The notes under the pieces are model-generated. The model saw only the letters and a program-made list of their open reading frames with translations, ran no database searches and was not told where the DNA came from. From positions 1-64,000 of IMG/VR virus record IMGVR_UViG_3300020810_001156: a stretch of 64,000 nt of DNA. One strand, 5' to 3'. A program made the translations under genes and the position numbers. Shown here in pieces: positions 3,722 to 49,229 of this stretch; position 1 is the stretch's first letter; every line of letters starts with the position of its first letter.

Positions 3722-4309
3722 ATGAGAAAACACATTATTTTTGGAATATTGATAGTTGTAGCTCTACTATCCTTTGGAATGAGTGATTCTAAAGACAAAG
3801 AGCTAAACCTTCCAACGATTGAACAAATGGAAGAAGAACGAAAACTGAAAGAAATTGCTATCCAAGATAGTATCAATCAGTACCACAAAGATGAATTAGA
3901 TAGATACTTAGATGCTATCGGATTTAGAGAAAGTGGAAATAGATATAATGTAACCAATACATTTGGTTATATGGGTAAGTACCAATTTGGTAAATCTACC
4001 TTAAAAGGCTTAGGATACAATGTAAGTAGAAATGAGTTTCTAAACAATCCAGACCTACAAGAAGAAGCAATGTTATCTTTATTAAACCATAATAAAGAGA
4101 AACTACAAACATATATTGACATTTACGATGGTAAAACGATAAATGGAATATATATTACTGAGAGTGGTATTCTCGCAGCTGCCCATTTAGGAGGACAAGG
4201 TTCTGTACGAAGATACTTTAAGAATGGAAAAGTTTTTAAAGATGGGAACGGAACTAAAATTACATCTTATATGAACCAGTTTAGTGGATATGACATTAAT
4301 TTAAATTAA
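3722..4309 (+). CDS. lysozyme-like / lytic transglycosylase protein with N-terminal membrane anchor
   Basis: IGFRESGNRY (catalytic Glu), GYMGKYQFG and ILAAAHLGG motifs of the lysozyme superfamily. Confidence 0.75.
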   Translation: MRKHIIFGILIVVALLSFGMSDSKDKELNLPTIEQMEEERKLKEIAIQDSINQYHKDELDRYLDAIGFRESGNRYNVTNTFGYMGKYQFGKSTLKGLGYNVSRNEFLNNPDLQEEAMLSLLNHNKEKLQTYIDIYDGKTINGIYITESGILAAAHLGGQGSVRRYFKNGKVFKDGNGTKITSYMNQFSGYDINLN

Positions 4310-4317
4310 TAAAGGAT

Positions 4318-4725
4318 ATGAGAAAATCGTTATGGATAGGGTTAGGCCTATTTTTTGTAGGTTGTGCCTACATCGGAGTACTTCTTCCTGGAGTACCAAC
4401 CACATTTTTTGTGATACTAGCTGCATGGGCATTTAGTAAATCTTCTGAGAAATTTAATAGGTGGTTACACGAACATCCTTTGTTCGGAAAGTATCTTACC
4501 AATTGGGAAACCAAAAAAATCTATCCAAATAGAGGTAGATGGGCTATGGTGGGTGTTATGTGTATTTCATTAATTTCAATGTATTTTACAGTTCCACTTA
4601 GAGTTGTAGGATATGCAGGAATTACATTTATACTAATTATTATTTGGGCATTTAGATATCCTGGTTCAGTTGAGGAGTATGATAAAAGAGTAAAAGAGGG
4701 TAAAAAAATCGGTTGGTTCAAATAG
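4318..4725 (+). CDS. ybaN: YbaN (DUF454) family inner-membrane protein
   Basis: GVLLPGVPTTFFVILAAWAF.KSS..F..WL..HP.FG.YL signature. Confidence 0.85.
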   Translation: MRKSLWIGLGLFFVGCAYIGVLLPGVPTTFFVILAAWAFSKSSEKFNRWLHEHPLFGKYLTNWETKKIYPNRGRWAMVGVMCISLISMYFTVPLRVVGYAGITFILIIIWAFRYPGSVEEYDKRVKEGKKIGWFK

Positions 4726-4728
4726 ATT

Positions 4729-5658
4729 GTGAAAAAGGTTACATTAGAACATACTGATATTCCTATAAAATACCCATCAATTGATTATTTTATTGATAAA
4801 CTTAAAAGTGGTCAACCATATCACTTTTTAAGATTTAATCATGGTATTATTGATTCTTTTGTTGACGCGTATGATAATTATGATATTCTTAAAAAAGATA
4901 TAGAATCTAAAAAATATGATACAATATCTCAAACGATATATGATGGGTATAAGAATTCACAATGGGGATTTAATTATTACAATTTACAATCAGAGACTAC
5001 GATTGATAAAATCAAATCTTTTGTAAAGATATTTTTTGAACTCAAATTATACATACCTAAATTGGAAGTTGGTATATCAAGTGGTGTTGGGATGGGTTAT
5101 ATATTTGGAACATATGCACCCGATTATCCAATTCAGATAAACAGAAATAAAGTTATTAAAGATATTGTAACTATAACAAATGGTGATTATTTCCATTCTG
5201 GTATTTTCAGGCATTTTTCAGTTATGGGTGATATGTTTAAATTCTTTGAAGTTGCCAATCAATTAAACTATGGTGTAATTGTAATAGGACCTAATTATTT
5301 GAGATTACTAAAATCCAAATATAACATTCAAAATTTCAATATGATTTCTATACCAACCAAAGGTGCTGTTGATTTTATGGATGAATATATTTCAGATATT
5401 AAAAATGCTATTAACCAAAATCAACATAACATATTACTTACATCGGTTGGAACTATAAGTTCTTGTTATATAGCTGATAAGTTAAAAGATGAAAATATCA
5501 TTGGTATTGATATTGGTAGAAGTTTAGATTGGGATATCAGAGAACATCAAAGTAAAGAACCTACAATGCCAAAAGGTGATTGTTGGATTTCACCTGCGGG
5601 TCGTGGAGATGTTTCTCAACAATATAAAAACTATATAAATGGTTTAAGAAATGGGTAA
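4729..5658 (+). CDS. putative GT-D-fold glycosyltransferase-like protein
   Basis: FLRFNHG N-terminal motif and C-terminal IDIGRSLD resemble GT-D/DUF1792 proteins; heads a sugar-modification operon. Confidence 0.45.
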   Translation: MKKVTLEHTDIPIKYPSIDYFIDKLKSGQPYHFLRFNHGIIDSFVDAYDNYDILKKDIESKKYDTISQTIYDGYKNSQWGFNYYNLQSETTIDKIKSFVKIFFELKLYIPKLEVGISSGVGMGYIFGTYAPDYPIQINRNKVIKDIVTITNGDYFHSGIFRHFSVMGDMFKFFEVANQLNYGVIVIGPNYLRLLKSKYNIQNFNMISIPTKGAVDFMDEYISDIKNAINQNQHNILLTSVGTISSCYIADKLKDENIIGIDIGRSLDWDIREHQSKEPTMPKGDCWISPAGRGDVSQQYKNYINGLRNG

Positions 5659-6289
5659 GGGAGTTTATAAAATTACTGAAGAATTTGAAGATAAATTGGC
5701 TCATTATACTGGAGCTAGATTTGCAGTAACGGTAGATAATATGAGTAACGCTCTATTTCTAGCGTTATATTATGAACACAATGTAATGAATAGAACTGAA
5801 GATATTCTTACGATACCAAGTCGTACATATCCATCAGTACCTTGTGAAATCATTCATGCAGGTCTTAAAGTGAACTTTCGTAAAGTTAAAGGAAAGACTA
5901 TCAAAGGAGCATACCAATTAGAGGGTTCTAATGTATGGGATTCAGCTCTAACTTTTACAGCTGATATGTACAAACCAAATACACATATGTGTGTTTCGTT
6001 TACAGGTCCTTACAAACATTTTAAACTTTCAAAAGGTGGTGCGATTCTAACCGATGATTATGATGCATATCTTTGGTTCAAAAGAGCTAGATATAGTGGA
6101 AGAAGAGAATGTTCATATCACGAAGATAACTTTGATATGTTAGGGTGGAATTTTTATATGATGCCCGAACTTGCCGCCAGGGGATTGTTACTTATGGGAC
6201 AATTCTATGAAGGTGGTAAGAAAAAGGTTAACGATGATTTAGAATTATCGTATCCTGATTTAAGTAAATTTGAAATATATAAACAATAA
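5651..6289 (+). CDS. DegT/DnrJ/EryC1/StrS-family aminotransferase (short form)
   Basis: FEDKLAHYTGARFAVTVDN..NALFLAL, SFTGPYKH...GGAILTDD and GWNFYM motifs. Confidence 0.8.
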   Translation: MGKGVYKITEEFEDKLAHYTGARFAVTVDNMSNALFLALYYEHNVMNRTEDILTIPSRTYPSVPCEIIHAGLKVNFRKVKGKTIKGAYQLEGSNVWDSALTFTADMYKPNTHMCVSFTGPYKHFKLSKGGAILTDDYDAYLWFKRARYSGRRECSYHEDNFDMLGWNFYMMPELAARGLLLMGQFYEGGKKKVNDDLELSYPDLSKFEIYKQ

Positions 6290-6309
6290 ATATATAGTTA
6301 GATTTATCA

Positions 6310-7452
6310 ATGAACTTCAAAAAAACCAAAGAACAATTAACGATAAAGAAATCAGCAAGAATATTTGCCGAAACTTATATTAAACCAAACGCTTATTATT
6401 GGGATAATAATGAAATCTTTCCAAAGGAGTTACTACATAATGCTGGTGAGTTGGGGTTTATGGGTATTTTAATTCCAAAAGAATATGGTGGATTGGGATT
6501 GGGGTATATTGAATATGCTGATGTAATAGAAGAGATATCCAAAGTAGACCCATCTATTGGATTATCCATAGCAGCTCATAATTCATTACCATCACAACAT
6601 ATTTACAAATTTGGTACAAAAGAACAAAAAGAAAAGTGGTTACCAAAACTAGCTTCTGGTAAGTGGATTGGTAGTTGGGGATTGACTGAAGAAAATACTG
6701 GTTCTGATGCTGGAAATATGGATTGTGTAGCTGTAAAGGATGGAGATGGTTGGCTGATAAATGGTGTAAAGAAATTTATTACACATGGTAAATCATCCGA
6801 TATTACAGTGGTAGTTGTGAGAACTGGTGATAGAGGAGATTCGCATGGAATGACTGCATTTGTGGTTGAAAGAGGAACTAGAGGGTTTTCCTCAGGTAAA
6901 GTAGAAACAAAAATGGGAATGAGAGCATCTGAAACTGCTGAAATGGTATTTAAAGATTGTTGGATTTCTGATGAAAATAGATTGGGAGAAATCGGTGAGG
7001 GGTTTATCCAATCAATGAAAATATTAGATGGTGGTAGAATATCAATAGCTGCACTATCTTTGGGGATAGCTAAAGGGGCTTATGAATGTGCTTTAAATTA
7101 CTCAAATAAAAGAGTACAATTTGGTAAACCAATTAGTTCATTCCAATCCGTTGGATTTAAATTAGCTGATATGGCTACCGAAATAGAAGCATCGGAATTA
7201 CTGATTCAGAAAGCATCTATTGAAAAGAGCACTAAGTTATCAGCTATGTGTAAGATGTATGCATCTGAAGTTTGTGTTAAGATAACTAATGAAGCTATGC
7301 AGATTTTGGGTGGATATGGATTTGTAAAAGGTGAATATCCAGTAGAAAGGTTTTTAAGAGATTCCAAACTATGTACAATCGGTGAAGGAACTACTGAAAT
7401 TCAAAAATTAGTAATTTTTAGAAAAATAAACAATGAAAGTAGGAAAGTATAA
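6310..7452 (+). CDS. acyl-CoA dehydrogenase
   Basis: GSWGLTEENTGSDAG, WLINGVKKFITHG, KMGMRASET, RVQFGKPI, QILGGYGF and TIGEGTTEIQ motifs. Confidence 0.95.
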   Translation: MNFKKTKEQLTIKKSARIFAETYIKPNAYYWDNNEIFPKELLHNAGELGFMGILIPKEYGGLGLGYIEYADVIEEISKVDPSIGLSIAAHNSLPSQHIYKFGTKEQKEKWLPKLASGKWIGSWGLTEENTGSDAGNMDCVAVKDGDGWLINGVKKFITHGKSSDITVVVVRTGDRGDSHGMTAFVVERGTRGFSSGKVETKMGMRASETAEMVFKDCWISDENRLGEIGEGFIQSMKILDGGRISIAALSLGIAKGAYECALNYSNKRVQFGKPISSFQSVGFKLADMATEIEASELLIQKASIEKSTKLSAMCKMYASEVCVKITNEAMQILGGYGFVKGEYPVERFLRDSKLCTIGEGTTEIQKLVIFRKINNESRKV

Positions 7453-7924
7453 TATAATCGCAGATGATGTAATTATCGAAGATGGTGTTGAAATTGGAAA
7501 CTTCAATATCATAGGAGCTGGAACTATAATCCGAAAGGGAACTGTAGTTGGTAACTATTGTGAAATAGGTGAAAATAATGATATCGGTGAAAACTCGATT
7601 GTTCAAGGTAGAGTTAGAACTGCTAGTGGGTGTATTATAGAAAAAAATGTAACTATAAAATATGGTACAATTCTAACTTCAGATGTACTACTAAAAGAAG
7701 GATGTTTTTTAGGTCCTCATACTATTACATTGGGTTCAACACATGAAAGGATAACCAAACATGGAACTGTAATCGGTAAAAATACCTACATTGGAGCTGG
7801 TTCGAAAATAGCTGCTGATACTAAAATCGGTGATGATATTGTAGTTGGTGCTTTGGGATTTGTAAATAAAGATATAAATGAAAAGGGAATATATGTAGGA
7901 TTGCCCGTTAAAAAAATAAAATAA
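7433..7924 (+). CDS. hexapeptide-repeat (left-handed beta-helix) acyltransferase
   Basis: [IV]G[DEN]xxx repeats; C-terminal YVGLPVKKIK. Confidence 0.85.
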   Translation: MKVGKYNIIADDVIIEDGVEIGNFNIIGAGTIIRKGTVVGNYCEIGENNDIGENSIVQGRVRTASGCIIEKNVTIKYGTILTSDVLLKEGCFLGPHTITLGSTHERITKHGTVIGKNTYIGAGSKIAADTKIGDDIVVGALGFVNKDINEKGIYVGLPVKKIK

Positions 7925-8745
7925 TGTTATCAATTCTTCCAAATGCTGGTTTTGGTTCTACAACCTATTATGATGGTGATGATGTAAATCACCTATCTCA
8001 CTTAAAAAATTGTAAGTTAATATGTAAAAAAAGATTCAATATTGATGAATCGGTTGAGCAAATAGTTGTAGAGGACCCTCAGCTACATTTTTACAAATTA
8101 TCAAATAAAGTATCAAATACTTACATTTTTAATGAAAATGAAGGGTATAGTAAGGGTAAAAATTGTGATATTCATAATACTGCTACAATTGGAGTGGGAG
8201 TAGAAATTGGTGATAATGTAACTATTGGACCAAATGTTGTAATTTATTCTCATACTAAAATTGGTGATAATGTAACAATAGATTCCAATTGTACAATTGG
8301 AACTGAAGGAATGATGTGGGTGTGGGATAATAATAAAAAAGTATATCTCAGACAGTTAGGTGGAGTTTTAATTGAAAATAATGTTAGGATTTGTAGTAAT
8401 TGTGTTATAGTTAGAGGTTCAGCTAATGAACTTACGATTATTAGAGAGGGTTCTAACTTAGCGCCAGGATGTTGTATTGGGCATGGAACTGAAATAGGTG
8501 AGTATGTACATTTCGCTAACAATATATCAACTGGTGGTTCAACAAAAATTGCTGGTTATAACTTTGTAGGAAGTGGTGTAGTTTTTAGAGCTGGTGTTAA
8601 CGTTACTTCAAATGATGTAATTATCGGAGCTGGTGCTGTTGTTAATAAAAACATAGATAAGAGTGGGGTTTATGTTGGTGTACCTGCTAAATGGATAAAA
8701 GAATCCAAAGGTAAATTAAATGGAATGCCAAAATGGAGAAGATAA
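7924..8745 (+). CDS. LpxD-like hexapeptide-repeat N-acyltransferase
   Basis: IGTEG..., QLGGVLIENNVRI..NCVIVRG, IGHGTEIG motifs of the LpxD family. Confidence 0.8.
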   Translation: MLSILPNAGFGSTTYYDGDDVNHLSHLKNCKLICKKRFNIDESVEQIVVEDPQLHFYKLSNKVSNTYIFNENEGYSKGKNCDIHNTATIGVGVEIGDNVTIGPNVVIYSHTKIGDNVTIDSNCTIGTEGMMWVWDNNKKVYLRQLGGVLIENNVRICSNCVIVRGSANELTIIREGSNLAPGCCIGHGTEIGEYVHFANNISTGGSTKIAGYNFVGSGVVFRAGVNVTSNDVIIGAGAVVNKNIDKSGVYVGVPAKWIKESKGKLNGMPKWRR

Positions 8746-9284
8746 AAGTATTTCAAATTGGATTTAACAAATGTGGAACACAATCTCTTTGTGATTTTTT
8801 TCTTCAAAATGGATATAAATCCGTACATTGGGGTGAAGGAAAATGGGCTAATCATTTTAAAAAAAATCAAAGTGAAGGTAACCTACTTTGTGAAGGAGCT
8901 AATGATATTGTAATGTGGACTGATATTGGATTTATACAAAGGAACTTTCAAATATTTGCTGAACAATATCCCAATTCTAAATTCATATACAATATCAGAC
9001 CTTTAGAAAAGTGGTTAGATAGTAGAATTAGACAATATAAAAAACATCCACTTTCCTTTACAGATGGATATGGATTTACTATTGAAAATGGAATTGATAG
9101 AATTGATTATTGGAAATCCGAATGGTTTTATCACAAAAAAGTTATTGAAGAGTTTTTTGTGGGAAATATGGCTAAACGATTATTGATTTTTGATATTGAA
9201 AAAAATAATGGTGAGGATATTCAATCTTTTTTACCAGAATTAAAGTTTAGTAACTTAAAAATACCATATAGAAACAAAGGATGA
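8733..9284 (+). CDS. sulfotransferase-family P-loop protein
   Basis: KVFQIGFNKCGTQSL PAPS-binding loop; FIYNIRP..KWL.SR. Confidence 0.75.
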   Translation: MEKIKVFQIGFNKCGTQSLCDFFLQNGYKSVHWGEGKWANHFKKNQSEGNLLCEGANDIVMWTDIGFIQRNFQIFAEQYPNSKFIYNIRPLEKWLDSRIRQYKKHPLSFTDGYGFTIENGIDRIDYWKSEWFYHKKVIEEFFVGNMAKRLLIFDIEKNNGEDIQSFLPELKFSNLKIPYRNKG

Positions 9285-9360
9285 GTGATATAGCAATTAT
9301 AGTAATTATTGTGATTGGAGGACTTTTATCTGGATATTTAAGATATTCGGAGTATAAAGA

Positions 9361-9392
9361 TTTGTAATTCTCATTTATTTTTCGTATATTTG
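9361..9392 (+). promoter_or_regulatory. Bacteroidota sigma-A-type promoter
   Basis: TTTG 9361-9364, TATATTTG 9385-9392. Confidence 0.8.
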
Positions 9393-9432
9393 TATTAACA
9401 AAACTTAAAGATGAACAAAATCAAGTAATGTA

Positions 9433-9657: not shown

Positions 9658-10728
9658 ATGAATTACGCACTAACTTACGATGATATTCAATTAGTACCAG
9701 CTTTTTCGAATATCAAATCAAGACAAAATATCAAACTTCATACGATGTTGAGTGAAAGATATGGATTATTAAATCCTATCGTAGCTTCACCAATGGATAC
9801 AGTTTGTGAGTTTGAAATGGCTTACAAAATGGCTGAATTGGGTGGAGTTGGGTGTATTCACCGATTTATGAGTATCAAAGAACAAAGAGATATCGTAGAG
9901 AGGTTGTATGAAGCAATCTATGCCGATGAATTTGGTATTGCTGAACAATGGGGTGTAATGTACGATGATTGGCATGGTGAAATCAAAGCCGTACCTATCA
10001 TGGCTGCTATTGGAGTTCAAAATGAAGATAAGGATAGAGCTTCGGCATTGGTTGAAGCTGGTGCAAATGTTTTACTGATTGATGTGGCTCATGGAGACCA
10101 CCAAAATGTGTTAGATATGATTCATTGGTGTGTAACTCAAGATGATTTTCAAAATGTAGATATCATAGCTGGAAATATTGCAACTGCAGAGGCAGCAGAG
10201 TTACTCCAAACTTATGGAGTACATGGTTTGAGAGTTGGAATTGGTGGAGGTTCACTTTGTACAACGAGAATTAAAACTGGGTTTGGTGTTCCAAATGTAA
10301 CTTCATTAGAGGATATCGCTAGGGTATCGAATGTACCTATTATGGCTGATGGTGGTTTGAGAACTTCTGGTGATATCTCAAAAGCACTAGCAGTTGGAGC
10401 TGATTGTGTAATGTTGGGTTCACTATTAGCTGGAACTGATGAAGCGCCTGGTCAAATTGTTGAAACTCCAAACGGATTGTACAAAAGATATAGAGGTTCA
10501 GCATCATTGGAAACTAAAGTAACTCACGGACAAGCTGCGAGAAATGTTGAAGGTGAAGCAACAACAATTCCATATAAAGGTGGAGTTAAATTTATTATCA
10601 ATGGATTATTGGATGGAGTGAAATCAGCCCTAAGTTATGCTGGGGCTAGTGATTTAAAAAATTATAATCCAAAATATGTAGTAGTTACCAATGCTGGACA
10701 GAATGAAGCTAAACCGCATCTTTTATGA
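9658..10728 (+). CDS. guaB: IMP dehydrogenase / GMP reductase family protein, no CBS domains
   Basis: ALTYDDIQLVP, ASPMDTV, IDVAHG, GNIAT, GIGGGSLCTTR (catalytic Cys), ADGG; IMPDH versus GMPR not resolved. Confidence 0.85.
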   Translation: MNYALTYDDIQLVPAFSNIKSRQNIKLHTMLSERYGLLNPIVASPMDTVCEFEMAYKMAELGGVGCIHRFMSIKEQRDIVERLYEAIYADEFGIAEQWGVMYDDWHGEIKAVPIMAAIGVQNEDKDRASALVEAGANVLLIDVAHGDHQNVLDMIHWCVTQDDFQNVDIIAGNIATAEAAELLQTYGVHGLRVGIGGGSLCTTRIKTGFGVPNVTSLEDIARVSNVPIMADGGLRTSGDISKALAVGADCVMLGSLLAGTDEAPGQIVETPNGLYKRYRGSASLETKVTHGQAARNVEGEATTIPYKGGVKFIINGLLDGVKSALSYAGASDLKNYNPKYVVVTNAGQNEAKPHLL

Positions 10729-11116: not shown

Positions 11117-11539
11117 ATGAGTAAGAAAAAAGCTGTTATAGTTAGTGGATATTTCAATCCGCTTCATAAAGGACACTTAGAATTATTTGAGTTAGCAAAA
11201 CAACACGCTGATAAACTTTGGGTGATTGTAAATTCAGATAAGCAAAGAGAACTGAAAGGTTCTGAGTACTTTATGGATGAGGATGAAAGATTACAAATCG
11301 TAAAAGCAATTAGATATGTAGATTATGCTCTAATTTCTCAAGATACTGATAAAACACAATGTGAAACCCTCAAACAATTTTCAGAAATGTTTGGTGAGAT
11401 TTATGATTTGGCATTCGCTAATGGTGGTGACCAAAATAATGATACAATCCCAGAAGTTGAGGTTTGTAAAGAAAATGGTATTGAATTAATCGATGGATTA
11501 GGAAACAAAATCCAATCCTCAAGTTGGTTATTGAAATAA
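11117..11539 (+). CDS. cytidylyltransferase-like nucleotidyltransferase (RfaE-II/TagD family)
   Basis: VSGYFNPLHKGH (HxGH), VIVNSD, FANGGD motifs. Confidence 0.9.
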   Translation: MSKKKAVIVSGYFNPLHKGHLELFELAKQHADKLWVIVNSDKQRELKGSEYFMDEDERLQIVKAIRYVDYALISQDTDKTQCETLKQFSEMFGEIYDLAFANGGDQNNDTIPEVEVCKENGIELIDGLGNKIQSSSWLLK

Positions 11540-20179: not shown

Positions 20180-22900
20180 TTAGAATCTATAAGTTAAACT
20201 TGCGTTCCAAGTTCTACCAAATCCGAACCATACTGAGTTTCTAACATCAACACCATTCCATGTAGTTGAACTAGCATCTGCATGAATGTTAGAGTTAGAT
20301 TCTGCAATATAAACAGCATCGAATAAGTTGTTGATATTAGCTCTCGCAGTAAATTTACCAAACTTACCAGTCAATCCTAAATCAACTAAACCATACGATG
20401 GTAATTTCATCGCACCTAAGTTATCAGGTTGTGTAAACTCCGAATCAGTAATAGAGTAGTCAGCGTATAATCCATCTACAAATCTATAATCTACATCAAC
20501 ATTAAATCTTTTACCTAACTTCTGGTCTACTCCTAAAACAGCTACGAATTGTGCAGCATCACCAACTTTAGCATCTTTAAGGTAAAGAGTACCTGTTCCG
20601 ATTGATTGTTGGTTATCATCAAATAATTCTGCTTCGAAATCTTTAGTATATCTCCAATCACCGATTGATAACATACCTCTGAATCTCGTTGCGTTTGATA
20701 ATTGATACTTACCTTCAAATTCGATACCATTATGTACTACATCGATATCTCTGAATTGTGCAAATCCATCTACACCTTGTTGGTTAGATAAACTTCTACT
20801 AACAAATCTATTACCCCAAGTTGTTGTGTAAGCGTTAATGTTAAACGATACATCTGAACCAATAAAACCATAACCCAATTCAAATGAACGAATTTCTTCG
20901 TTTTGTAAATCTGGATTAATTTCATTAGCAAAGTTAGGGAATACTGCATCAAACTGAGGTTGTCTTGAAATTACACCTGCGTTAAAGAACACATTTGATT
21001 TCTCATCGATATTGTAGTTAGCACCACCCTTTACATATCCACCACCTTGGTTTTGAACATCTGATTCTGGGTTACCTGGTTGGTCAAAATAATCGATTCT
21101 TTGGAATGCTTGGTTAGATAAACCTGCTTGTACTACTGCAGTTAATTTATCTCCCTGATATTCTACTAAACCATTAAGACCTTGCCATCCAACTTTACCA
21201 ACATTGTAGTAATCAATCTTCGGACCGTTTAGACCTGTATTCTGAAAAGGATTTGCTTCAACTAAAGTATTGATGATTTGACCGTTAGAGTTTTTGTTAC
21301 CCGTTGAGTAATAACCATCTAATCCCATTAAATCATTAAGAACTCTATAATGATAACCAGTATAGCTTCTTAAATCAACACCAATAGATGTTTTGAATTT
21401 ACCAAATTGTCCTTCTAAGTTTGAGATACCACCAACCCAGTTGTGTGAGTTCATAGATGCTCTTCTTACCAATACTGTTCTATTTACATTAGAATCTCTG
21501 AATCCATTCGAACCAATAAGTTGTCCTTGGAATGCTGAGATATCACCTGTATATCCTTCAGTAGTTGATTGGTTAGCTGCAACGATTGCATCGAAATCGA
21601 TGAATCCATTTGCATCTCTTGAACCTCTACCATTTTCTAAGTAGTGTTCTGTAAGGTCTTTTCTGAAAGGTAAGATATCAGTTGCAGCTGCACGATAGTT
21701 GTTACCACGAGGACCTGTACCACCACCTCTACCAGCAGAACCATATAATGATGTTGCTAATTTAAGGTTATCTGAAATGTTCCAATCCCAGTTGAAAGTT
21801 GCTAATGGTTTGTTGTAGAAGTTTCTTCTTAAAGAATACTCTTCTCCATTTAGTGTACCACCATTAGAATTCCATCTCTGGTCAATTCCTTCTTCACCAA
21901 AGTTTTGGTAATCTCTAATAGATACCCAAACATCTCTTTGATGGTGCCATTGACCTGCACCTAAGAATGAAAAGTTCAATTCATGGTCTGAACCTTCCGG
22001 TGCGTAACCAACTGCAGCGAAGTAAGTCCATCCTTCACCTGAAGTGTTGTAAACATATCCGTTACCAGCCCACTTAGATAATAAGAAAGATGATGCCCAT
22101 CCTTTATCATTCTTACCTGTGTTGTAAGAAACTCCTGTTTTGGTGTATCCATCGTTACCAACCATTTGAATTACTTTACCACCTTCAGTTTTCTGTGCGG
22201 CTTTAGTAAAAATGGAAACAGTTCCCCCAACTGAAGGAACTGCCAACTTAGATGCACCTAAACCTCTTTGGATTTGGATACCTGATGCTACATCGGTTAA
22301 ACCTTGCCAGTTACTCCAATATACCCATCCGTTCTCCATATCGTTAACGGGTTGTCCGTTAATAAGGAAAGATGTATTTCTTTGGTCAAATCCTCTAAGA
22401 GAGATTCTTGAATCACCATAACCACCACCTTGTTTAGTAGCATAAACCCCTGGAGTTTTATTCATAATTTCAGGGAATTCTTGGTTACCAACCTTTAGAG
22501 AAATCTCAGCTGGTGATATCGATGATACCGCTACTGGAGTTTCTCTTACTTTTGCTACATCAATTACCCCTGATGTAACCACCACTTCAGCTAACTGATT
22601 TAATGCAGTTGGTAAATTTACAATCATATCGTTCACAGCAACAACCTCAGTTGTTTGGAAACCAATAAAAGAAATTACTAAAGTGTTACCAGCGGATGCC
22701 CCAGAAATAGAAAAGAGACCATCAAAATCGGTTGTTGTACCATTTTGGGTCCCTTTGATTACTACCGTTGCGCCTGGTAGGGGTTCATTCGTTTCTGCAT
22801 CTACCACTGTTCCAGTGATTTGTGCGAAACCGGTCATTGAGGTGAAAACCATCAATAACCCAATCAAAAATTGCTTCATAATTGCTTGATTTTTGTTCAT
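20180..22900 (-). CDS. TonB-dependent outer-membrane receptor
   Basis: Signal peptide (FAQ), CarboxypepD-like domain (ITGTVVD..EPLPGATV), plug (SLRGF...INGQP), barrel ending ...SLTYRF. Confidence 0.9.
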   Translation of the reverse strand: MNKNQAIMKQFLIGLLMVFTSMTGFAQITGTVVDAETNEPLPGATVVIKGTQNGTTTDFDGLFSISGASAGNTLVISFIGFQTTEVVAVNDMIVNLPTALNQLAEVVVTSGVIDVAKVRETPVAVSSISPAEISLKVGNQEFPEIMNKTPGVYATKQGGGYGDSRISLRGFDQRNTSFLINGQPVNDMENGWVYWSNWQGLTDVASGIQIQRGLGASKLAVPSVGGTVSIFTKAAQKTEGGKVIQMVGNDGYTKTGVSYNTGKNDKGWASSFLLSKWAGNGYVYNTSGEGWTYFAAVGYAPEGSDHELNFSFLGAGQWHHQRDVWVSIRDYQNFGEEGIDQRWNSNGGTLNGEEYSLRRNFYNKPLATFNWDWNISDNLKLATSLYGSAGRGGGTGPRGNNYRAAATDILPFRKDLTEHYLENGRGSRDANGFIDFDAIVAANQSTTEGYTGDISAFQGQLIGSNGFRDSNVNRTVLVRRASMNSHNWVGGISNLEGQFGKFKTSIGVDLRSYTGYHYRVLNDLMGLDGYYSTGNKNSNGQIINTLVEANPFQNTGLNGPKIDYYNVGKVGWQGLNGLVEYQGDKLTAVVQAGLSNQAFQRIDYFDQPGNPESDVQNQGGGYVKGGANYNIDEKSNVFFNAGVISRQPQFDAVFPNFANEINPDLQNEEIRSFELGYGFIGSDVSFNINAYTTTWGNRFVSRSLSNQQGVDGFAQFRDIDVVHNGIEFEGKYQLSNATRFRGMLSIGDWRYTKDFEAELFDDNQQSIGTGTLYLKDAKVGDAAQFVAVLGVDQKLGKRFNVDVDYRFVDGLYADYSITDSEFTQPDNLGAMKLPSYGLVDLGLTGKFGKFTARANINNLFDAVYIAESNSNIHADASSTTWNGVDVRNSVWFGFGRTWNASLTYRF

Positions 22901-44050: not shown

Positions 44051-45004
44051 ATGAATTTAGGATACGCTTGTATTAATATGACTCTATCAGGTCAAAAACC
44101 AAAAGTAACTACTAATCGTTCAATGATTAAAAGAACATTCTTAGAAAGGGGTGTTGGTTACGCAACTGAATTAGGGTTACAAAACGCAAGAGATTTGTTT
44201 CATATTTTAAAATGGAATAATGAAAATGGAATCAAACTATTTAGATTATCATCTGAAATGTTTCCATGGGGTTCTGAGTATGATTTAGAAACAGCACCAC
44301 ATTACCTAAGAATTAAAACAATATTAGAGGGGTGTGGTCATTATGCAAAAACAAATGGAATTAGAATTACTTCTCACCCTGGTCCTTTCAATGTTCTTAC
44401 TTCACCACATAAAAAAGTAGTAGATAATACTATTACTGATTTAGAACTACATGGTAAAGTTTTTGATTTATTAGGATTAGAAAAATCACATTATAACAAA
44501 ATCAACATTCATTGCAATGGTGTTTATGGAGATAAGAAATCTGCTATGGATAGATTTTGTGATAACTTCCAAAGATTATCACCATCGGTTCAATCTCGTT
44601 TGACAGTTGAGAATGATGATAAAGCATCAATGTATTCGGTAAAAGATTTAATGTATATTCACAACAAAATTGGTATCCCAATCGTATTTGATTATCACCA
44701 CCACAAATTTAATACAGGTGGATTGAGTGAAGAAGAAGCTCTAAAATTAGCAATCTCAACTTGGCCAAAAGGAATTAAACCCATTGTTCATTACTCTGAA
44801 AGTAAAGCATTACATGAGGAGAATGAAAAATTAAAACCACAAGCACATTCAGATTACATCAATGAATTACCCGAACTATATGGTACTGATGTTGATGTAA
44901 TGGTGGAAGCAAAAGCAAAAGAACTTGCTATTCTACCATTTATTAATAAAGATAGTGTATGTGCTTATAGTGGATTGTTAAACACACAAAGTTACGCAGA
45001 ATGA
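44051..45004 (+). CDS. uvsE: UV DNA damage endonuclease (UvsE/UVDE)
   Basis: LGYACIN, FRLSS, HPGPF, HCNG, ENDDK, FDYHHH, HYSES, AHSD, EAKAKE. Confidence 0.95.
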   Translation: MNLGYACINMTLSGQKPKVTTNRSMIKRTFLERGVGYATELGLQNARDLFHILKWNNENGIKLFRLSSEMFPWGSEYDLETAPHYLRIKTILEGCGHYAKTNGIRITSHPGPFNVLTSPHKKVVDNTITDLELHGKVFDLLGLEKSHYNKINIHCNGVYGDKKSAMDRFCDNFQRLSPSVQSRLTVENDDKASMYSVKDLMYIHNKIGIPIVFDYHHHKFNTGGLSEEEALKLAISTWPKGIKPIVHYSESKALHEENEKLKPQAHSDYINELPELYGTDVDVMVEAKAKELAILPFINKDSVCAYSGLLNTQSYAE

Positions 45005-45387
45005 TTATAGATGTAGATATTAAAGCTCCTAAGAGAGTAGAAAAGAATTGGGGATATGAATTATGGATTCACAACGATGAAGAGTATTGTGGGAAATTAT
45101 TGGTATTCACAAAAGAAAGAAATAGATTCTCAATGCATTACCACTTAAAGAAAAAAGAAAGTTGGTATGTGCAAGAAGGAAGATTCCAATTTAATTGGTT
45201 GAATGTAGAAGATGGAAAATTAGAAGGTAAAACTTTAGAGAAGGGTGATAGTGTTTTAATTGAAAGAGGATTGCCTCATCAGTTAATTTCATTAGAAGAT
45301 AACTCAATTGTATTTGAAGTTTCGACTGAACACTTTGATGAGGATAGTTACAGAGTTTATAGAGAAACACCTGAGGATTTATTATGA
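45001..45387 (+). CDS. cupin-domain protein (sugar isomerase-like)
   Basis: K.WGYE.W..N..EYCGK, SMHYH..K.ESWYV, PHQL, EVST. Confidence 0.85.
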   Translation: MIIDVDIKAPKRVEKNWGYELWIHNDEEYCGKLLVFTKERNRFSMHYHLKKKESWYVQEGRFQFNWLNVEDGKLEGKTLEKGDSVLIERGLPHQLISLEDNSIVFEVSTEHFDEDSYRVYRETPEDLL

Positions 45388-47996: not shown

Positions 47997-49229
47997 ATGA
48001 ATCGGTTTGCGAAAATATGTTTAGGCATGGCAGGTGCTATTATGTTCACTTTCTTTGCAGTACAAACTTGTATTGTATTTAGATGGTGTGAACCCTCTTA
48101 CTTTCTTGCCGAATTTGGATATGGTTGTGTTATTGCATTCATGCCACCATTCTTCTATGTGGTATATGATTTCATTCGTACTACAAAATTAAAAGAAGCA
48201 AATATTGATTTACAATTAAATGCTATTGATAAATCTAATTTGGTGGTTATGTTGGATATGGATGGGTACATCTTATCAGCAAACAAAAAGTTTTGTAACA
48301 CAATGATGTGTACTGAAAAAGAACTAAAGTACAAACAACATAAAAGAATGGTCCCAAAAGAATATGGTGATAGTTTAGAGTATCACGAATTTTGGGAAAG
48401 GTTAAAGAGAGGTGAAAGTATTACTGGTGAATTTGAAAGAATTGCAAAGGATGGTACATCTCGTTGGTTATTTGGTAACTACACTCCCATCCAAAGTTCA
48501 GATGGTAGTTACAACAAAGTTCTAAAGATAGCAACTGATATTACACTTCAACACGAATCCGAAGTGTTGGTAAATCAGAAAAACTCTTACTTAGAACACG
48601 CTGCGAAGATTCTCCGACACGATATGCATAGTGGTATCAACACATATATGCCAAGAGGATTATCATCATTACAAAGAAGATTATCTGAAGAAAAAATTAA
48701 AGAGTTAAAAATTGATGCTCCACTAAGGATGTTAGCAGAAGGATTGAAACACACACAAAAAGTTTATGCTGGTGTTAAGGAGTTTACAAACTTAGTTAAG
48801 GAAGATGCACAATTAGATATGAAGGAATGTAACTTATCAGAAATATTGAGAAATTACTTATCCTCTACATCTTATGTTTCACAAGTTAAAATAGATAGGT
48901 TACCATTCACTCAAGTAAACGAACCACTCTTTTGTACTGCAATAGATAACTTAATCAGAAATGGATTAAAGTATAATGATAGTAGTACAAAGGTGGTTAA
49001 AATTTATATGGAAAATGATTTTACAATTTGTGTGGAAGATAATGGTAGAGGTATTACTAATGAAGAGTTCATTGAGTTATCTAAACCATATACAAGAAAA
49101 GAAGGACAAAAGGAAGGAGGTTCAGGATTGGGATTAAACATTTGTATCGCAATTTTGAAAGAACATGGTTTTAAGATAACTGCAGAGAAGTTAGACTCTG
49201 GTACAAAATTAAAAATTAAATTAAAATGA
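47997..49229 (+). CDS. membrane PAS-domain sensor histidine kinase
   Basis: Two TM helices; PAS-PAC; H-box LRHDM; N-box DNLIRNGLKY; EDNGRGI; GSGLGL. Confidence 0.9.
   Translation: MNRFAKICLGMAGAIMFTFFAVQTCIVFRWCEPSYFLAEFGYGCVIAFMPPFFYVVYDFIRTTKLKEANIDLQLNAIDKSNLVVMLDMDGYILSANKKFCNTMMCTEKELKYKQHKRMVPKEYGDSLEYHEFWERLKRGESITGEFERIAKDGTSRWLFGNYTPIQSSDGSYNKVLKIATDITLQHESEVLVNQKNSYLEHAAKILRHDMHSGINTYMPRGLSSLQRRLSEEKIKELKIDAPLRMLAEGLKHTQKVYAGVKEFTNLVKEDAQLDMKECNLSEILRNYLSSTSYVSQVKIDRLPFTQVNEPLFCTAIDNLIRNGLKYNDSSTKVVKIYMENDFTICVEDNGRGITNEEFIELSKPYTRKEGQKEGGSGLGLNICIAILKEHGFKITAEKLDSGTKLKIKLK

What the first reader, a model, noticed from the sequence alone, without database searches (positions are those of the whole stretch)
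4729..9284. Six-gene phage operon for an acylated/sulfated amino-sugar
Seen: near-contiguous, mostly overlapping genes for a GT-D-like protein, a DegT aminotransferase, an acyl-CoA dehydrogenase, two hexapeptide acyltransferases and a sulfotransferase. Established: DegT plus beta-helix acyltransferases make N-acyl amino sugars. Inference: the phage builds an unusual glycan for its virion, its DNA or the host surface. The cytidylyltransferase (11117) and cupin (45001) could supply activated sugars.
Basis: partly seen in the sequence, partly recalled or inferred. Interest (0 to 1): 0.6.

Follow-up and report, generated by a model that had tools for sequence, protein, structure and literature searches.

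The report
Phage sugar-decoration operon with captured host gene
A 253-kb phage of marine Flavobacteria carries an intact operon that most likely makes an N-acylated, sulfated amino sugar, built around an unusually short, very widespread viral aminotransferase, with one gene, an acyl-CoA dehydrogenase, captured from the host.

Summary
All six genes exist at the stated coordinates, are intact, co-oriented and mostly overlapping.

- **Identities.** They are a GT-D-fold protein (fold evidence only), a half-size DegT-like PLP enzyme (212 aa, no C-terminal domain), a complete acyl-CoA dehydrogenase (ACAD), a QdtC/WlbB-like and an LpxD-like hexapeptide acyltransferase, and a small Sulfotransfer_4 enzyme.
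- **Not a decaying host LPS fragment.** In related ~250-kb phage contigs, DUF454, the GT-D-like gene and the half-size DegT form a conserved anchor. The DegT is 87–92% identical across them.
- **Swappable cassettes.** The anchor is followed by alternative tailoring sets: two LbH ± sulfotransferase ± TauD, or methyltransferase + sulfotransferase.
- **Five conserved genes plus one insertion.** The closest relative has the same order without the ACAD. The ACAD is a precise one-gene insertion, ~70% identical to housekeeping Flavobacteriaceae ACADs. Its third-position GC content matches the phage genes rather than a bacterial homologue, and a 73%-identical copy sits in a related phage's glycan island.
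- **Supporting genes elsewhere in the genome.** These include an RmlB-like 4,6-dehydratase, an APS kinase and a second glycan cluster with a second half-size DegT.

Best reading: cytoplasmic synthesis and transfer of an N-acyl, sulfated amino-deoxy sugar, probably onto virion proteins. The target and the ACAD's role remain inferred.

The parts
3722..4309 (+). 195-aa lysozyme/transglycosylase-like protein (context; conserved just upstream in relatives)
   Evidence: PHROG baseplate hub/tail lysozyme E 1.8e-12. 65-67% identical in L009/L012.
4318..4725 (+). DUF454 (YbaN-like) small membrane protein; first gene of the conserved anchor
   Evidence: PF04304 E 7.7e-30. Two hydrophobic segments. 77-91% identical and always directly upstream in L005, L009, L017, L019 and L021.
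4729..5658 (+). P1, 309 aa, GT-D-fold putative glycosyltransferase (GTG start, as in homologue P0123)
   Evidence: No family hit. AF2 pLDDT 91.2. Best structural matches are DUF1792 4pfx/5v4a. Language-model neighbours are viral GT-D-like clusters. In relatives it lies before the DegT, or after it fused to Methyltransf_24.
5651..6289 (+). P2, 212 aa, half-size DegT-like PLP enzyme (large domain only)
   Evidence: PF01041 46.5 bits, profile positions 24-98 of 360 only. AF2 pLDDT 96.6. Foldseek matches sugar aminotransferases with TMq 0.62-0.68, covering about two thirds of the targets. K122, S116 and E13 are invariant and D97 nearly so in 62 homologues. The Lys aligns with the DegT Schiff-base Lys.
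6310..7452 (+). P3, 380 aa acyl-CoA dehydrogenase, host-derived single-gene insertion (inserted DNA about 6296-7440)
   Evidence: Three ACAD domains. ~70% identical to Flavobacteriaceae housekeeping ACADs. Glu in the GEGT motif is invariant. Absent from L019/L020, with clean junctions.
7433..7924 (+). P4, 163 aa left-handed beta-helix acyltransferase, QdtC/WlbB-like
   Evidence: Hexapep E 1.7e-21. Best solved relatives are QdtC 3fs8 (E 8e-13) and WlbB 3mqg. 84% identical in L005 and L019.
7924..8745 (+). P5, 273 aa LpxD-like beta-helix N-acyltransferase
   Evidence: NCBIfam LpxD subfamily 117.5 bits, below the cut-off of 207. Best solved relatives are LpxD 4e75/2iu8. IGHG aligns with IAHN of LpxD 4e75, which I take from memory to be the catalytic His motif. 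61-82% identical in relatives.
8733..9284 (+). P6, 183 aa Sulfotransfer_4 sulfotransferase
   Evidence: PF17784 E 1.3e-8, above the cut-off. Atlas neighbours are 100% Sulfotransfer_4 and mostly viral. PAPS-loop-like motifs present. 78% identical in L019.
9658..10728 (+). IMPDH/GMP-reductase-like protein (conserved downstream neighbour; probably nucleotide metabolism, not part of the sugar pathway)
   Evidence: PF00478 E 5.8e-97. 75-87% identical in relatives.
11117..11539 (+).
   Evidence: PF01467 E 4.7e-15, RfaE domain II-like E 4e-15, but also NMN adenylyltransferase-like. 90-94% identical in relatives.

Best explanation
The six genes are the variable arm of a glycan-tailoring island in a ~253-kb myovirus that infects marine or salt-marsh Flavobacteriia.

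Proposed pathway:
1. A phage RmlB-like 4,6-dehydratase (genome 238034-238936) makes an NDP-4-keto-6-deoxyhexose (inferred).
2. The half-size DegT converts it to an NDP-amino-deoxy sugar using PLP. The fold and PLP residues are shown; the substrate is inferred.
3. The QdtC-like and LpxD-like beta-helix enzymes acylate it. The family is shown; the acyl donor and position are inferred.
4. The GT-D-fold protein transfers the sugar to an acceptor in the cytoplasm, most likely a virion protein (inferred).
5. The small sulfotransferase adds sulfate from PAPS, helped by a phage APS kinase (inferred).

The anchor (DUF454, GT-D-like, half-size DegT) is constant among related phages, and the tailoring genes behind it are exchanged as cassettes. 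This pattern suggests diversification of a surface glycan.

The ACAD was captured from a Flavobacteriaceae host and inserted exactly between the DegT and the first acyltransferase. It either supplies a 2-enoyl-CoA donor or precursor for the N-acyl group, or is an independent metabolic gene. I give these about even odds.
For: **Gene identities:**

**Conserved anchor and cassette swapping.**
- L019/L020: same order minus the ACAD. Identities are DUF454 91%, P1 75%, DegT 92%, LbH 84% and 82%, ST 78%.
- L005: TauD in the ACAD's slot.
- L017 and L009: methyltransferase + sulfotransferase instead.
- L021: two LbH only.

**DegT paired with an acyltransferase.**
- DegT + LbH adjacency recurs in immuto, a 595-kb megaphage and at least five further phage-like contigs.
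- Family members occur fused to GNAT, or to GT1 + FkbM methyltransferase.

**Size of the half-size DegT family.** It is large and uniformly ~200-220 aa: 686 clusters at 50% identity, and over 7,900 sequences among the 8,000 scored candidates.

**Purifying selection.** In variant contigs, 3 of 4 ACAD changes and 9 of 10 P5 changes are silent.

**Presence in RNA libraries.** Contigs from four salt-marsh RNA libraries, one DNase-treated, cover all six genes and bridge four of the five gene junctions.

**Supply genes in the same genome**:
- RmlB-like dehydratase (TIGR01181, 303 bits).
- Second SDR.
- HAD+NTP_transferase fusion.
- APS kinase.
- Second cluster with three GT2, a UDP-GlcNAc 2-epimerase, a GNAT and a second half-size DegT (41% identical).

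**Cytoplasmic assembly.** No protein resembles a multi-span flippase or polymerase.

**ACAD retained in phages.** The window's ACAD, P0278, P0279 and P0280/81 form one clade (SH-aLRT 100, quick tree). P0280 sits beside GT genes of a related phage island.
Against: - No enzyme activity, product or acceptor has been observed.
- The half-size DegT lacks the C-terminal domain of every solved sugar aminotransferase, so its substrate could differ.
- P1 has no sequence-level match to GT-D families. By memory-based comparison, the DUF1792 metal motif region reads R-F-N-H-G..D instead.
- The dehydratase and other suppliers lie 17-50 kb away, not in the operon.
- The closest relative lacks the ACAD, so the pathway works without it.
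- RNA-library contigs cannot exclude DNA carry-over, because no silent control stretch was laid.
- The TM scan is a crude hydropathy count.
- The ACAD tree is a quick, midpoint-rooted one; the careful search did not finish.
Confidence: 0.6

Rival explanations
1. The conserved sugar module has five genes. The ACAD is an unrelated auxiliary metabolic gene (short or branched-chain acyl-CoA oxidation for energy or lipid precursors) that landed in a permissive intergenic site.
For: L019/L020 have the identical gene order without it. The junctions are exact gene boundaries. It is ~70% identical to housekeeping ACADs that sit in ordinary chromosomal contexts. The catalytic Glu is retained. In IMG/VR, the only other contig found with it is a same-species one.
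Against: Its 3' end overlaps the next gene's start by 20 nt, so it is tightly integrated. GC3 is 0.21, matching the phage genes, against 0.29 in a bacterial homologue. A 73%-identical clade member lies in the glycan island of a related phage, at a different position. In L005 the same slot holds another oxidoreductase, TauD, and TauD-like genes follow the DegT in L030 and L034.
Confidence: 0.4
2. The module remodels the host envelope (LPS, capsule or the Bacteroidota O-glycan) during infection, for example to block superinfection or alter outer-membrane properties, rather than decorating virions.
For: A membrane protein (DUF454) heads the anchor. P5 is LpxD-like. A WavE-like LPS-core gene and a CHU_C (T9SS-sorted) protein lie nearby in L021. 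The phage also carries two TonB-dependent receptors, so it does change the host surface.
Against: No flippase-, polymerase- or initiating-transferase-like multi-span protein was found in the 253-kb genome (crude). The only characterised GT-D enzyme I know of glycosylates a protein (PMC5063993). No lysogeny genes were examined or found here.
Confidence: 0.2
3. The sugar is attached to phage DNA as a hypermodification that protects against restriction.
For: Phage glycosyltransferases often target DNA (reviewed in PMC12619734). The genome encodes a ThyA-family enzyme that could in principle be a hydroxymethylase.
Against: Phage immuto carries the orthologous half-size DegT (76%) plus LbH and GT genes, yet has canonical dA, dC and dT, with only fdPreQ1 replacing dG. 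Neither a base-hydroxymethylation gene nor a DNA-glycosyltransferase family was seen in the island. Sulfated, N-acylated amino sugars on DNA are, to my knowledge, unknown.
Confidence: 0.06
4. The genes make a non-glycan product, such as an N-acyl amine lipid or a sulfated small molecule.
For: The ACAD, an LpxD-like acyltransferase and a sulfotransferase are all lipid-compatible. The half-size DegT lacks the C-terminal domain of solved sugar aminotransferases, which I take from memory to help hold the nucleotide sugar.
Against: Relatives of the half-size DegT are embedded among glycosyltransferases, sugar epimerases and sugar methyltransferases. P4's nearest solved relatives are sugar N-acetyltransferases.
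Confidence: 0.08
5. The cluster is a recent, decaying fragment of a host LPS locus.
For: One gene (the ACAD) is clearly of host origin.
Against: All six frames are intact. P1 has only seven homologue clusters, and those traced lie on phage-like contigs. Close half-size DegT relatives in 'genome' collections lie only on short MAG contigs assigned to many unrelated phyla, which fits mis-binned phage DNA. The module is conserved across many samples, and a variant was seen in a 2024 run as well as the 2018 runs. Variants are mostly synonymous. The host-derived gene is a housekeeping ACAD, not an LPS gene.
Confidence: 0.02

Closest known systems
Aminotransferase + LbH N-acyltransferase pairs of bacterial amino-sugar pathways (PglE/PglD, PseC/PseH, PerA/PerB, VioA/VioB, QdtB/QdtC)
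   Same: A DegT-fold PLP enzyme sits directly beside a left-handed beta-helix acyltransferase. The nearest solved relatives of P2 are GDP-perosamine synthase, PseC, ArnB and Pcryo_0618. Those of P4 are QdtC and WlbB.
   Different: P2 is only the large PLP domain (212 aa against ~370), with no C-terminal domain. There are two different LbH enzymes, one of them LpxD-like. The dehydratase is not adjacent. The genes are phage-borne.
Bacillus anthracis anthrose operon antABCD (decorates the BclA spore glycoprotein)
   Same: A compact operon needed to make a rare N-acyl amino-deoxy sugar on a surface protein (operon and phenotypes: PMC10050317). From my own knowledge, it combines an acyl-CoA-modifying enzyme, a glycosyltransferase, a DegT aminotransferase and an LbH N-acyltransferase, and its acyl donor derives from an ACAD product of leucine catabolism.
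   Different: The acyl-CoA enzyme there is an enoyl-CoA hydratase homologue, not an ACAD. There is no sulfotransferase. The aminotransferase is full-length. It is cellular, not viral. This is an analogy only; no homology was tested here.
DUF1792 / GT-D glycosyltransferase of streptococcal dGT1
   Same: Best structural match of P1 (Z 14.2). DUF1792 is a GT-D-type enzyme that adds glucose to the glycan on the Fap1 protein (PMC5063993). This fits cytoplasmic protein glycosylation.
   Different: 12-14% identity. No Pfam GT-D or GT-D-like hit and no profile match to PDB sequences. The N-terminal conserved motif differs, and P1 has extra C-terminal elements.
Virus-encoded virion glycosylation (mycobacteriophage capsid/tail-tube glycans; giant-virus fibril sugars)
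   Same: Viruses carrying their own glycosyltransferases, and in giant viruses amino-sugar aminotransferase and N-acetyltransferase genes, to decorate particles (mycobacteriophage case cited in PMC12619734; the giant-virus case is from my own knowledge).
   Different: No virion data exist here. The enzyme set (half-size DegT, GT-D-like, sulfotransferase, ACAD) has, as far as my searches show, not been described for any virion glycan.
Large Bacteroidota-infecting phages from metagenomes (bS21 phages, 'moraphages')
   Same: Large phages predicted to infect Flavobacteriia that list DegT-family aminotransferases or several core glycosyltransferases among their genes (PMC9723584, PMC12619734).
   Different: Those papers only list the annotations. 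None describes the half-size DegT, the cassette exchange or an ACAD. Relatedness of this genome to either group was not tested.

Membership tests
DegT/DnrJ/EryC1/StrS sugar aminotransferases (PF01041) | Fold-type I PLP large domain | tested here: met
   AF2 model pLDDT 96.6. Top 50 Foldseek hits are all sugar aminotransferases or dehydratases, E 5e-9 to 3e-7, TMq 0.57-0.68.
DegT/DnrJ/EryC1/StrS sugar aminotransferases (PF01041) | Schiff-base lysine, plus the Ser and Asp that hold PLP | tested here: met
   K122 and S116 are invariant and D97 is at least 90% conserved in 62 homologues. S-F-x-x-x-x-K aligns with the S-F-H-x-x-K of solved enzymes. Assignment of D97 to the pyridine nitrogen is inferred.
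DegT/DnrJ/EryC1/StrS sugar aminotransferases (PF01041) | C-terminal small domain and full-length (~360-400 aa) architecture | tested here: not met
   212 aa. The Pfam match covers profile positions 24-98 of 360 only. Foldseek alignments cover about 220-245 columns of 364-411-residue targets. The whole family is ~200-220 aa.
DegT/DnrJ/EryC1/StrS sugar aminotransferases (PF01041) | Transamination of an NDP-keto sugar | not testable with these tools
   Needs an enzyme assay.
GT-D glycosyltransferases (DUF1792; PF08759/PF22882) | GT-D fold | tested here: met
   5v4a_A Z 14.2, rmsd 3.4, 217 of 268 residues aligned. The next family (TagA/TarA) scores Z 9.6, and unrelated chains score 5.4 or less.
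GT-D glycosyltransferases (DUF1792; PF08759/PF22882) | Sequence-profile membership | tested here: not met
   No Pfam hit at E <= 0.01. A profile of 9 homologues finds nothing in PDB sequences at E <= 10. There are only language-model neighbours.
GT-D glycosyltransferases (DUF1792; PF08759/PF22882) | Metal-binding acidic motif and NDP-sugar-dependent transfer | tested here: inconclusive
   N37, H38, G39 and D42 are invariant in the P1 family. Correspondence to the DUF1792 motif rests on my memory of that motif; no residue-level structural alignment was available.
Acyl-CoA dehydrogenases | N, middle and C-terminal ACAD domains, full length | tested here: met
   PF02771, PF02770 and PF00441 are all matched essentially end to end.
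Acyl-CoA dehydrogenases | C-terminal catalytic glutamate | tested here: met
   E359 in G-E-G-T is invariant with nine ACAD homologues, mostly bacterial. Its role as the catalytic base is taken from knowledge of SCAD/MCAD.
Acyl-CoA dehydrogenases | Assignment to a specific substrate class | tested here: inconclusive
   The best NCBIfam equivalog (acryloyl-CoA reductase AcrC) scores 391.6 bits against a cut-off of 640. No equivalog cut-off is reached.
LpxD (UDP-3-O-acylglucosamine N-acyltransferase) | Equivalog-level score and full N-terminal uridine-binding domain | tested here: not met
   P5 scores 117.5 and 110.7 bits against cut-offs of 207 and 242.5. The match covers LpxD positions 124-317 only. 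P5 is 273 aa against ~340.
LpxD (UDP-3-O-acylglucosamine N-acyltransferase) | Beta-helix with the catalytic histidine | tested here: met
   I-G-H-G of P5 aligns with I-A-H-N of 4e75. That this His is the LpxD catalytic residue is from my own knowledge.
Sulfotransferases (PF17784 Sulfotransfer_4) | Profile match above the curated cut-off, and PAPS-binding loops | tested here: met
   35.4 bits against 22.8. N-K-C-G-T-Q-S lies near the N-terminus and R89..S97 follows. Motif assignment is by knowledge of the 5'-PSB and 3'-PB loops.
Conserved phage glycan island (DUF454 / GT-D-like / half-size DegT anchor + cassette) | Same anchor order in independent related contigs | tested here: met
   L005, L017, L019/L020 and L021/L022 share the order. 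In L009-L012 the P1 homologue is moved and fused.

The most novel reading that the evidence does not exclude
The ~210-aa DegT-like proteins are a new, mainly viral class of PLP sugar aminotransferase that works without the canonical C-terminal domain, possibly together with the co-varying GT-D-like protein. They anchor a plug-and-play locus in which marine jumbo phages swap acyl-, methyl-, hydroxyl- and sulfo-tailoring cassettes to vary a virion glycan. In this phage, a captured host ACAD gives the sugar an unsaturated or otherwise unusual N-acyl group.
Probability: 0.17. Interest if true: 0.75.

Novelty: new variant of a known kind. Interest (0 to 1): 0.55.

Why it matters
Phage-encoded glycan pathways are known, but their products are rarely defined. 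This locus raises three directly testable questions.

- **A minimal aminotransferase.** A very abundant half-size DegT family is strongly conserved (87-92% identical between phages whose neighbouring glycosyltransferase is only 32-75% identical). No characterised member turned up in my searches. Showing that a large-domain-only enzyme transaminates sugars would extend what is known about this enzyme class.
- **A natural series of variants.** Cassette exchange behind a fixed anchor provides natural variants for linking gene content to glycan chemistry and to phage-host recognition in marine Flavobacteriia, which are major polysaccharide degraders.
- **A rare gene in a phage.** A complete ACAD in a genuine phage is rare. 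The hits in the phage database that I inspected or could judge from their names looked like mislabelled bacterial contigs. IMG/VR holds it only in this species. It could show how a housekeeping gene is recruited into a viral pathway.

Tried and rejected
- **DNA similarity to phages.** Megablast of the operon found nothing. blastn found only the half-size DegT.
- **ACAD in phage records.** tblastn gave 38 records. The one inspected (Microcystis phage MaAM05) has a chromosome-like context, and most others (Acinetobacter phage MD-2021a contigs, a Salmonella record) look bacterial from their names, so they are not evidence for phage ACADs.
- **P1 sequence searches.** phmmer of P1, and a 9-sequence profile of it, gave no meaningful hit against PDB sequences.
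- **Promoters and terminators.** The sigma-70 promoter scan is at chance (48 found against 47.8 expected), and no terminator lies convincingly inside the operon. Bacteroidota promoters are not modelled either, so I drew no conclusion.
- **IMG/VR scans.** Scans with the ACAD, an ACAD alignment and the P1 alignment each returned only one same-species contig.
- **Genome-collection scan.** I repeated it with the single protein.
- **Complex prediction.** The idea that they bind is untested and is not claimed.
- **False negative.** The genome search 'own' with PF00483 found nothing, although a later hmmscan found an NTP_transferase domain. I therefore do not rely on negative 'own' family searches, including PF00550 and PF01747.
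- **Mistyped call.** One family search was mistyped and failed.
- **ACAD tree.** The careful search did not finish; only the quick tree is cited.
- **Nitrososynthase idea rejected.** I considered that the ACAD might be an ACAD-fold amino-sugar N-oxygenase. It is ~70% identical to ordinary ACADs and keeps the catalytic Glu, so I rejected this.
- **MGS remnant rejected.** No remnant of the MGS gene is present in the window.

Full report
**1. What the window is.**
- The window is the first 64 kb of a single 252,603-bp contig.
- The genome collection holds it as an IMG/VR virus record, which CheckV estimates to be 100% complete.
- G+C is about 33%, and almost every gene is on the + strand.
- A baseplate wedge gene lies at 55028-57061, so this is a myovirus-type tailed phage.
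- Host signals point to Flavobacteriia:
  - a SusC-type TonB-dependent receptor with a CarboxypepD_reg domain;
  - an ACAD about 70% identical to Flavobacteriaceae proteins;
  - a CHU_C (type IX secretion) protein in a related contig.
- The DNA occurs in many salt-marsh metagenomes.

**2. The observation.** Six + strand ORFs lie at 4729-5658, 5651-6289, 6310-7452, 7433-7924, 7924-8745 and 8733-9284. Overlaps are 8, 20, 1 and 13 nt, with one 20-nt gap.

| Gene | Size | Identity | Key evidence |
|---|---|---|---|
| P1 | 309 aa | GT-D-fold protein | No Pfam, NCBIfam or PHROG hit. AF2 model pLDDT 91.2. DUF1792 GT-D structures match best: Foldseek E 3e-5; VIA Z 14.2, against 9.6 for TagA/TarA and 5.4 or less for unrelated chains. 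Language-model neighbours are viral GT-D-like clusters. |
| P2 | 212 aa | Half-size DegT | See section 3. |
| P3 | 380 aa | Acyl-CoA dehydrogenase | All three ACAD domains matched end to end. |
| P4 | 163 aa | Hexapeptide acyltransferase | Nearest solved relatives QdtC and WlbB. |
| P5 | 273 aa | Hexapeptide acyltransferase | Nearest solved relative LpxD, histidine motif aligned, but below the LpxD equivalog cut-offs. |
| P6 | 183 aa | Sulfotransfer_4 | Above the Pfam cut-off. Motifs like the two PAPS-binding loops. Mostly viral Sulfotransfer_4 neighbours. |

**3. The 'DegT' is a half-size enzyme.**
- P2 is 212 aa. Pfam matches only profile positions 24-98 of 360.
- Its AlphaFold model (pLDDT 96.6) superposes on the large PLP-binding domain of solved sugar aminotransferases: Pcryo_0618, GDP-perosamine synthase, PseC and ArnB. 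TMq is 0.62-0.68, and their C-terminal ~120-130 residues have no counterpart.
- K122 and S116 are invariant and D97 nearly invariant among 62 homologues. The lysine aligns with the Schiff-base lysine of solved enzymes.
- The short form is not a truncation accident.
  - A search of representatives at 50% identity finds 686 clusters, nearly all ~200-220 aa.
  - A word-based search scored over 7,900 sequences at E <= 0.001, many from JGI, ENA and Tara ocean data.
- Fusion partners are a GNAT acetyltransferase, GT1 + FkbM methyltransferase, and homing-endonuclease domains.
- Close relatives in the species-genome collection occur only on short MAG contigs assigned to many unrelated phyla. This is what mis-binned phage DNA looks like.

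**4. Synteny: a fixed anchor and exchangeable cassettes.** Contigs of related phages (up to 264,953 bp) carry the same neighbourhood.

| Contig | Gene order after DUF454 |
|---|---|
| Window | P1, DegT, ACAD, LbH163, LbH273, ST4, (74 aa), IMPDH-like |
| L019/L020 | P1, DegT, LbH164, LbH273, ST4, MGS, IMPDH-like (no ACAD) |
| L021/L022 | P1, DegT, LbH155, LbH274, IMPDH-like, WavE-like |
| L005 | P1, DegT, TauD, LbH163, LbH277 |
| L017 | P1, DegT, Methyltransf_24, Sulfotransfer_3, MGS, IMPDH-like |
| L009-L012 | DegT, P1::Methyltransf_24 fusion, Sulfotransfer_1/3, MGS |

- The DegT stays 87-92% identical and DUF454 77-91%, while P1 falls to 75, 56, 38 and 32%.
- The sugar-forming step is thus held constant, while the transferase and the decorations diverge.
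- Further afield, the half-size DegT sits directly beside a PglB/PglD-type LbH acyltransferase in several places:
  - Flavobacterium phage immuto (76% identical);
  - a 595-kb uncultured megaphage (65%);
  - at least five other phage-like contigs.
- TauD-like genes follow the DegT in L030 and L034.
- An aminotransferase next to an LbH N-acyltransferase is the standard way bacteria make N-acyl amino sugars. This is the main reason I read P2 as a working sugar aminotransferase.

**5. The ACAD is a captured host gene.**
- The DNA alignment with L019 runs to the DegT stop codon, breaks, and resumes at the LbH163 start. About 1.15 kb holding exactly one gene has been inserted into a 4-bp spacer.
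- The protein is ~70% identical to ACADs of Robertkochia, Galbibacter, Imtechella, Joostella and other Flavobacteriaceae. In one such bacterial contig it sits among housekeeping genes (rpsU, tuf), not in an LPS locus.
- It is not raw, recent cargo, for five reasons.
  - Its last codons overlap the next gene.
  - Its third-position G+C is 0.21, like the phage genes, against 0.29 in a bacterial homologue.
  - The catalytic glutamate motif is kept.
  - Three of four variant sites seen in other samples are silent.
  - In a quick tree, the window's ACAD, a 99% and an 89% relative (P0278, P0279), and a 73% relative (P0280/81) form one clade apart from 25 bacterial-type sequences, with SH-aLRT 100.
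- P0280 lies on a 3.9-kb contig after a GT2 and a 249-aa protein. That protein is 71% identical to a gene of the L009 island. An ACAD of this clade therefore sits in the glycan island of a second related phage, at another position.
- Against a pathway role: the nearest relative manages without it.
- I put the odds that it feeds the acyltransferases at about one in two. It could do so by producing a 2-enoyl-CoA that is used directly or after hydration.
- The anthrose pathway is a precedent for an acyl-CoA-modifying enzyme inside an N-acyl amino-sugar operon. The operon is cited from PMC10050317; the enzyme roles are from my own knowledge.

**6. Support elsewhere in the genome.** All of the following lie outside the window.

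| Genome position | Gene | Evidence |
|---|---|---|
| 238034-238936 | dTDP-glucose 4,6-dehydratase-like SDR | TIGR01181, 303 bits, E 1.6e-90 |
| 236219-237076 | Second SDR | |
| about 194-208 kb | Tightly packed cluster (contents below) | |
| 218085-218570 | APS kinase, next to a small cytidylyltransferase-like gene | |

- The 194-208 kb cluster holds:
  - three GT2;
  - a UDP-GlcNAc 2-epimerase;
  - a GNAT;
  - a second half-size DegT (41% identical to P2);
  - a Sulfotransfer_1-like gene;
  - an FkbM methyltransferase;
  - a HAD+NTP_transferase fusion;
  - another methyltransferase.
- These genes supply a plausible keto-sugar substrate and the sulfate donor.
- A hydropathy scan found no protein with the many membrane spans of a flippase or polymerase. 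That favours assembly on a cytoplasmic acceptor.

**7. Expression and population data.**
- Contigs from three 2018 salt-marsh RNA libraries and one DNase-treated 2024 library match the operon at 95-100% identity.
- They cover all six genes and bridge the DegT/ACAD, ACAD/P4, P4/P5 and P5/P6 junctions.
- The tool warns that DNA can be present in RNA libraries. I take this as consistent with transcription, not proof.
- The variant sites are overwhelmingly synonymous.

**8. Target.**
- DNA is unlikely. LC-MS of immuto DNA showed canonical dA, dC and dT, with dG replaced by fdPreQ1 (10.1101/2023.04.13.536721).
- A virion protein is my first choice, for three reasons.
  - The only characterised GT-D enzyme glycosylates a protein (PMC5063993).
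  - No export machinery is encoded.
  - Cassette diversity fits a surface under diversifying selection.
- Host-envelope remodelling remains a serious rival. The anchor starts with a membrane protein, P5 is LpxD-like, and the phage clearly alters the host surface in other ways.

**9. Verdict.**
- The locus is a real, selected phage glycan module of five conserved genes plus a domesticated host ACAD.
- What is new is a variant of a known kind. I found none of the following described in the literature I could search:
  - the half-size viral DegT family;
  - the anchor-and-cassette organisation;
  - an ACAD within it.
- No alternative genetic code was used, and no toxin or animal-virus issue arose.

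Noticed in passing
window 20180-22900 (- strand); also genome 233072-235048: Two phage-encoded TonB-dependent outer-membrane receptors. The one in the window is SusC-like, with a CarboxypepD_reg domain typical of Bacteroidota, and is one of the very few genes on the minus strand.
   Followed up: no
genome 194000-208000 (outside the window): A second, larger glycan cluster of about 15 tightly packed genes. It holds three GT2, a UDP-GlcNAc 2-epimerase, a GNAT, a second half-size DegT (200553-201179, 41% identical to P2), a Sulfotransfer_1-like gene, an FkbM methyltransferase, a HAD+NTP_transferase fusion and a class I methyltransferase.
   Followed up: partly
genome 218085-218968 (outside the window): An APS kinase (161 aa) lies directly next to a 132-aa cytidylyltransferase-like protein. 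This may be a phage PAPS-supply module for its several sulfotransferases. No ATP-sulfurylase family hit was found, but that search type gave a false negative elsewhere.
   Followed up: partly
genome 243386-244560 (outside the window): A heme oxygenase plus ferredoxin-dependent bilin reductase pair, in a phage whose other host signals are Flavobacteriia rather than cyanobacteria.
   Followed up: no
genome 245175-246800 and 249111-251228 (outside the window): A GroEL-type chaperonin, and a 705-aa poly(A) polymerase/CCA-adding-like protein with HD and DUF5661 domains.
   Followed up: no
window 47997-49229; 44051-45004; 45001-45387: A PAS-domain histidine kinase, a UvdE UV-damage endonuclease, and an overlapping small cupin that resembles WbuC but scores below the cut-off (33.5 against 42 bits).
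   Followed up: partly
window 9285-9432, compared with L019 6146-6556: The MGS-domain gene found between the sulfotransferase and the IMPDH-like gene in relatives L019, L017 and L009 is cleanly absent here, with no remnant anywhere in the genome. This is another gene-sized indel in the island.
   Followed up: yes
proteins P0149, P0168, P0180, P0247 (relatives of window 5651-6289): Several half-size DegT representatives are fused to, or run on from, HNH, AP2-HNH or endonuclease VII domains. This suggests that homing endonucleases target this highly conserved gene.
   Followed up: no
window 4318-4725: DUF454 (YbaN-like, two hydrophobic segments) is conserved about as strongly as the half-size DegT (77-91%) and always heads the anchor. 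Its role in the module is unexplained.
   Followed up: partly
window 9658-10728 and 11117-11539: An IMPDH/GMP-reductase-like protein without a CBS domain, and a 140-aa cytidylyltransferase-like protein, are conserved downstream in relatives (75-94%). The latter matches both heptose-1-phosphate adenylyltransferase and NMN adenylyltransferase models, so it need not act on sugars.
   Followed up: partly
genome-wide (tool behaviour): the genome search 'own' with PF00483 reported no match, although hmmscan finds an NTP_transferase domain (E 7e-10) in genome 203816-205180. Negative results of that quick search should not be read as absence.
   Followed up: yes
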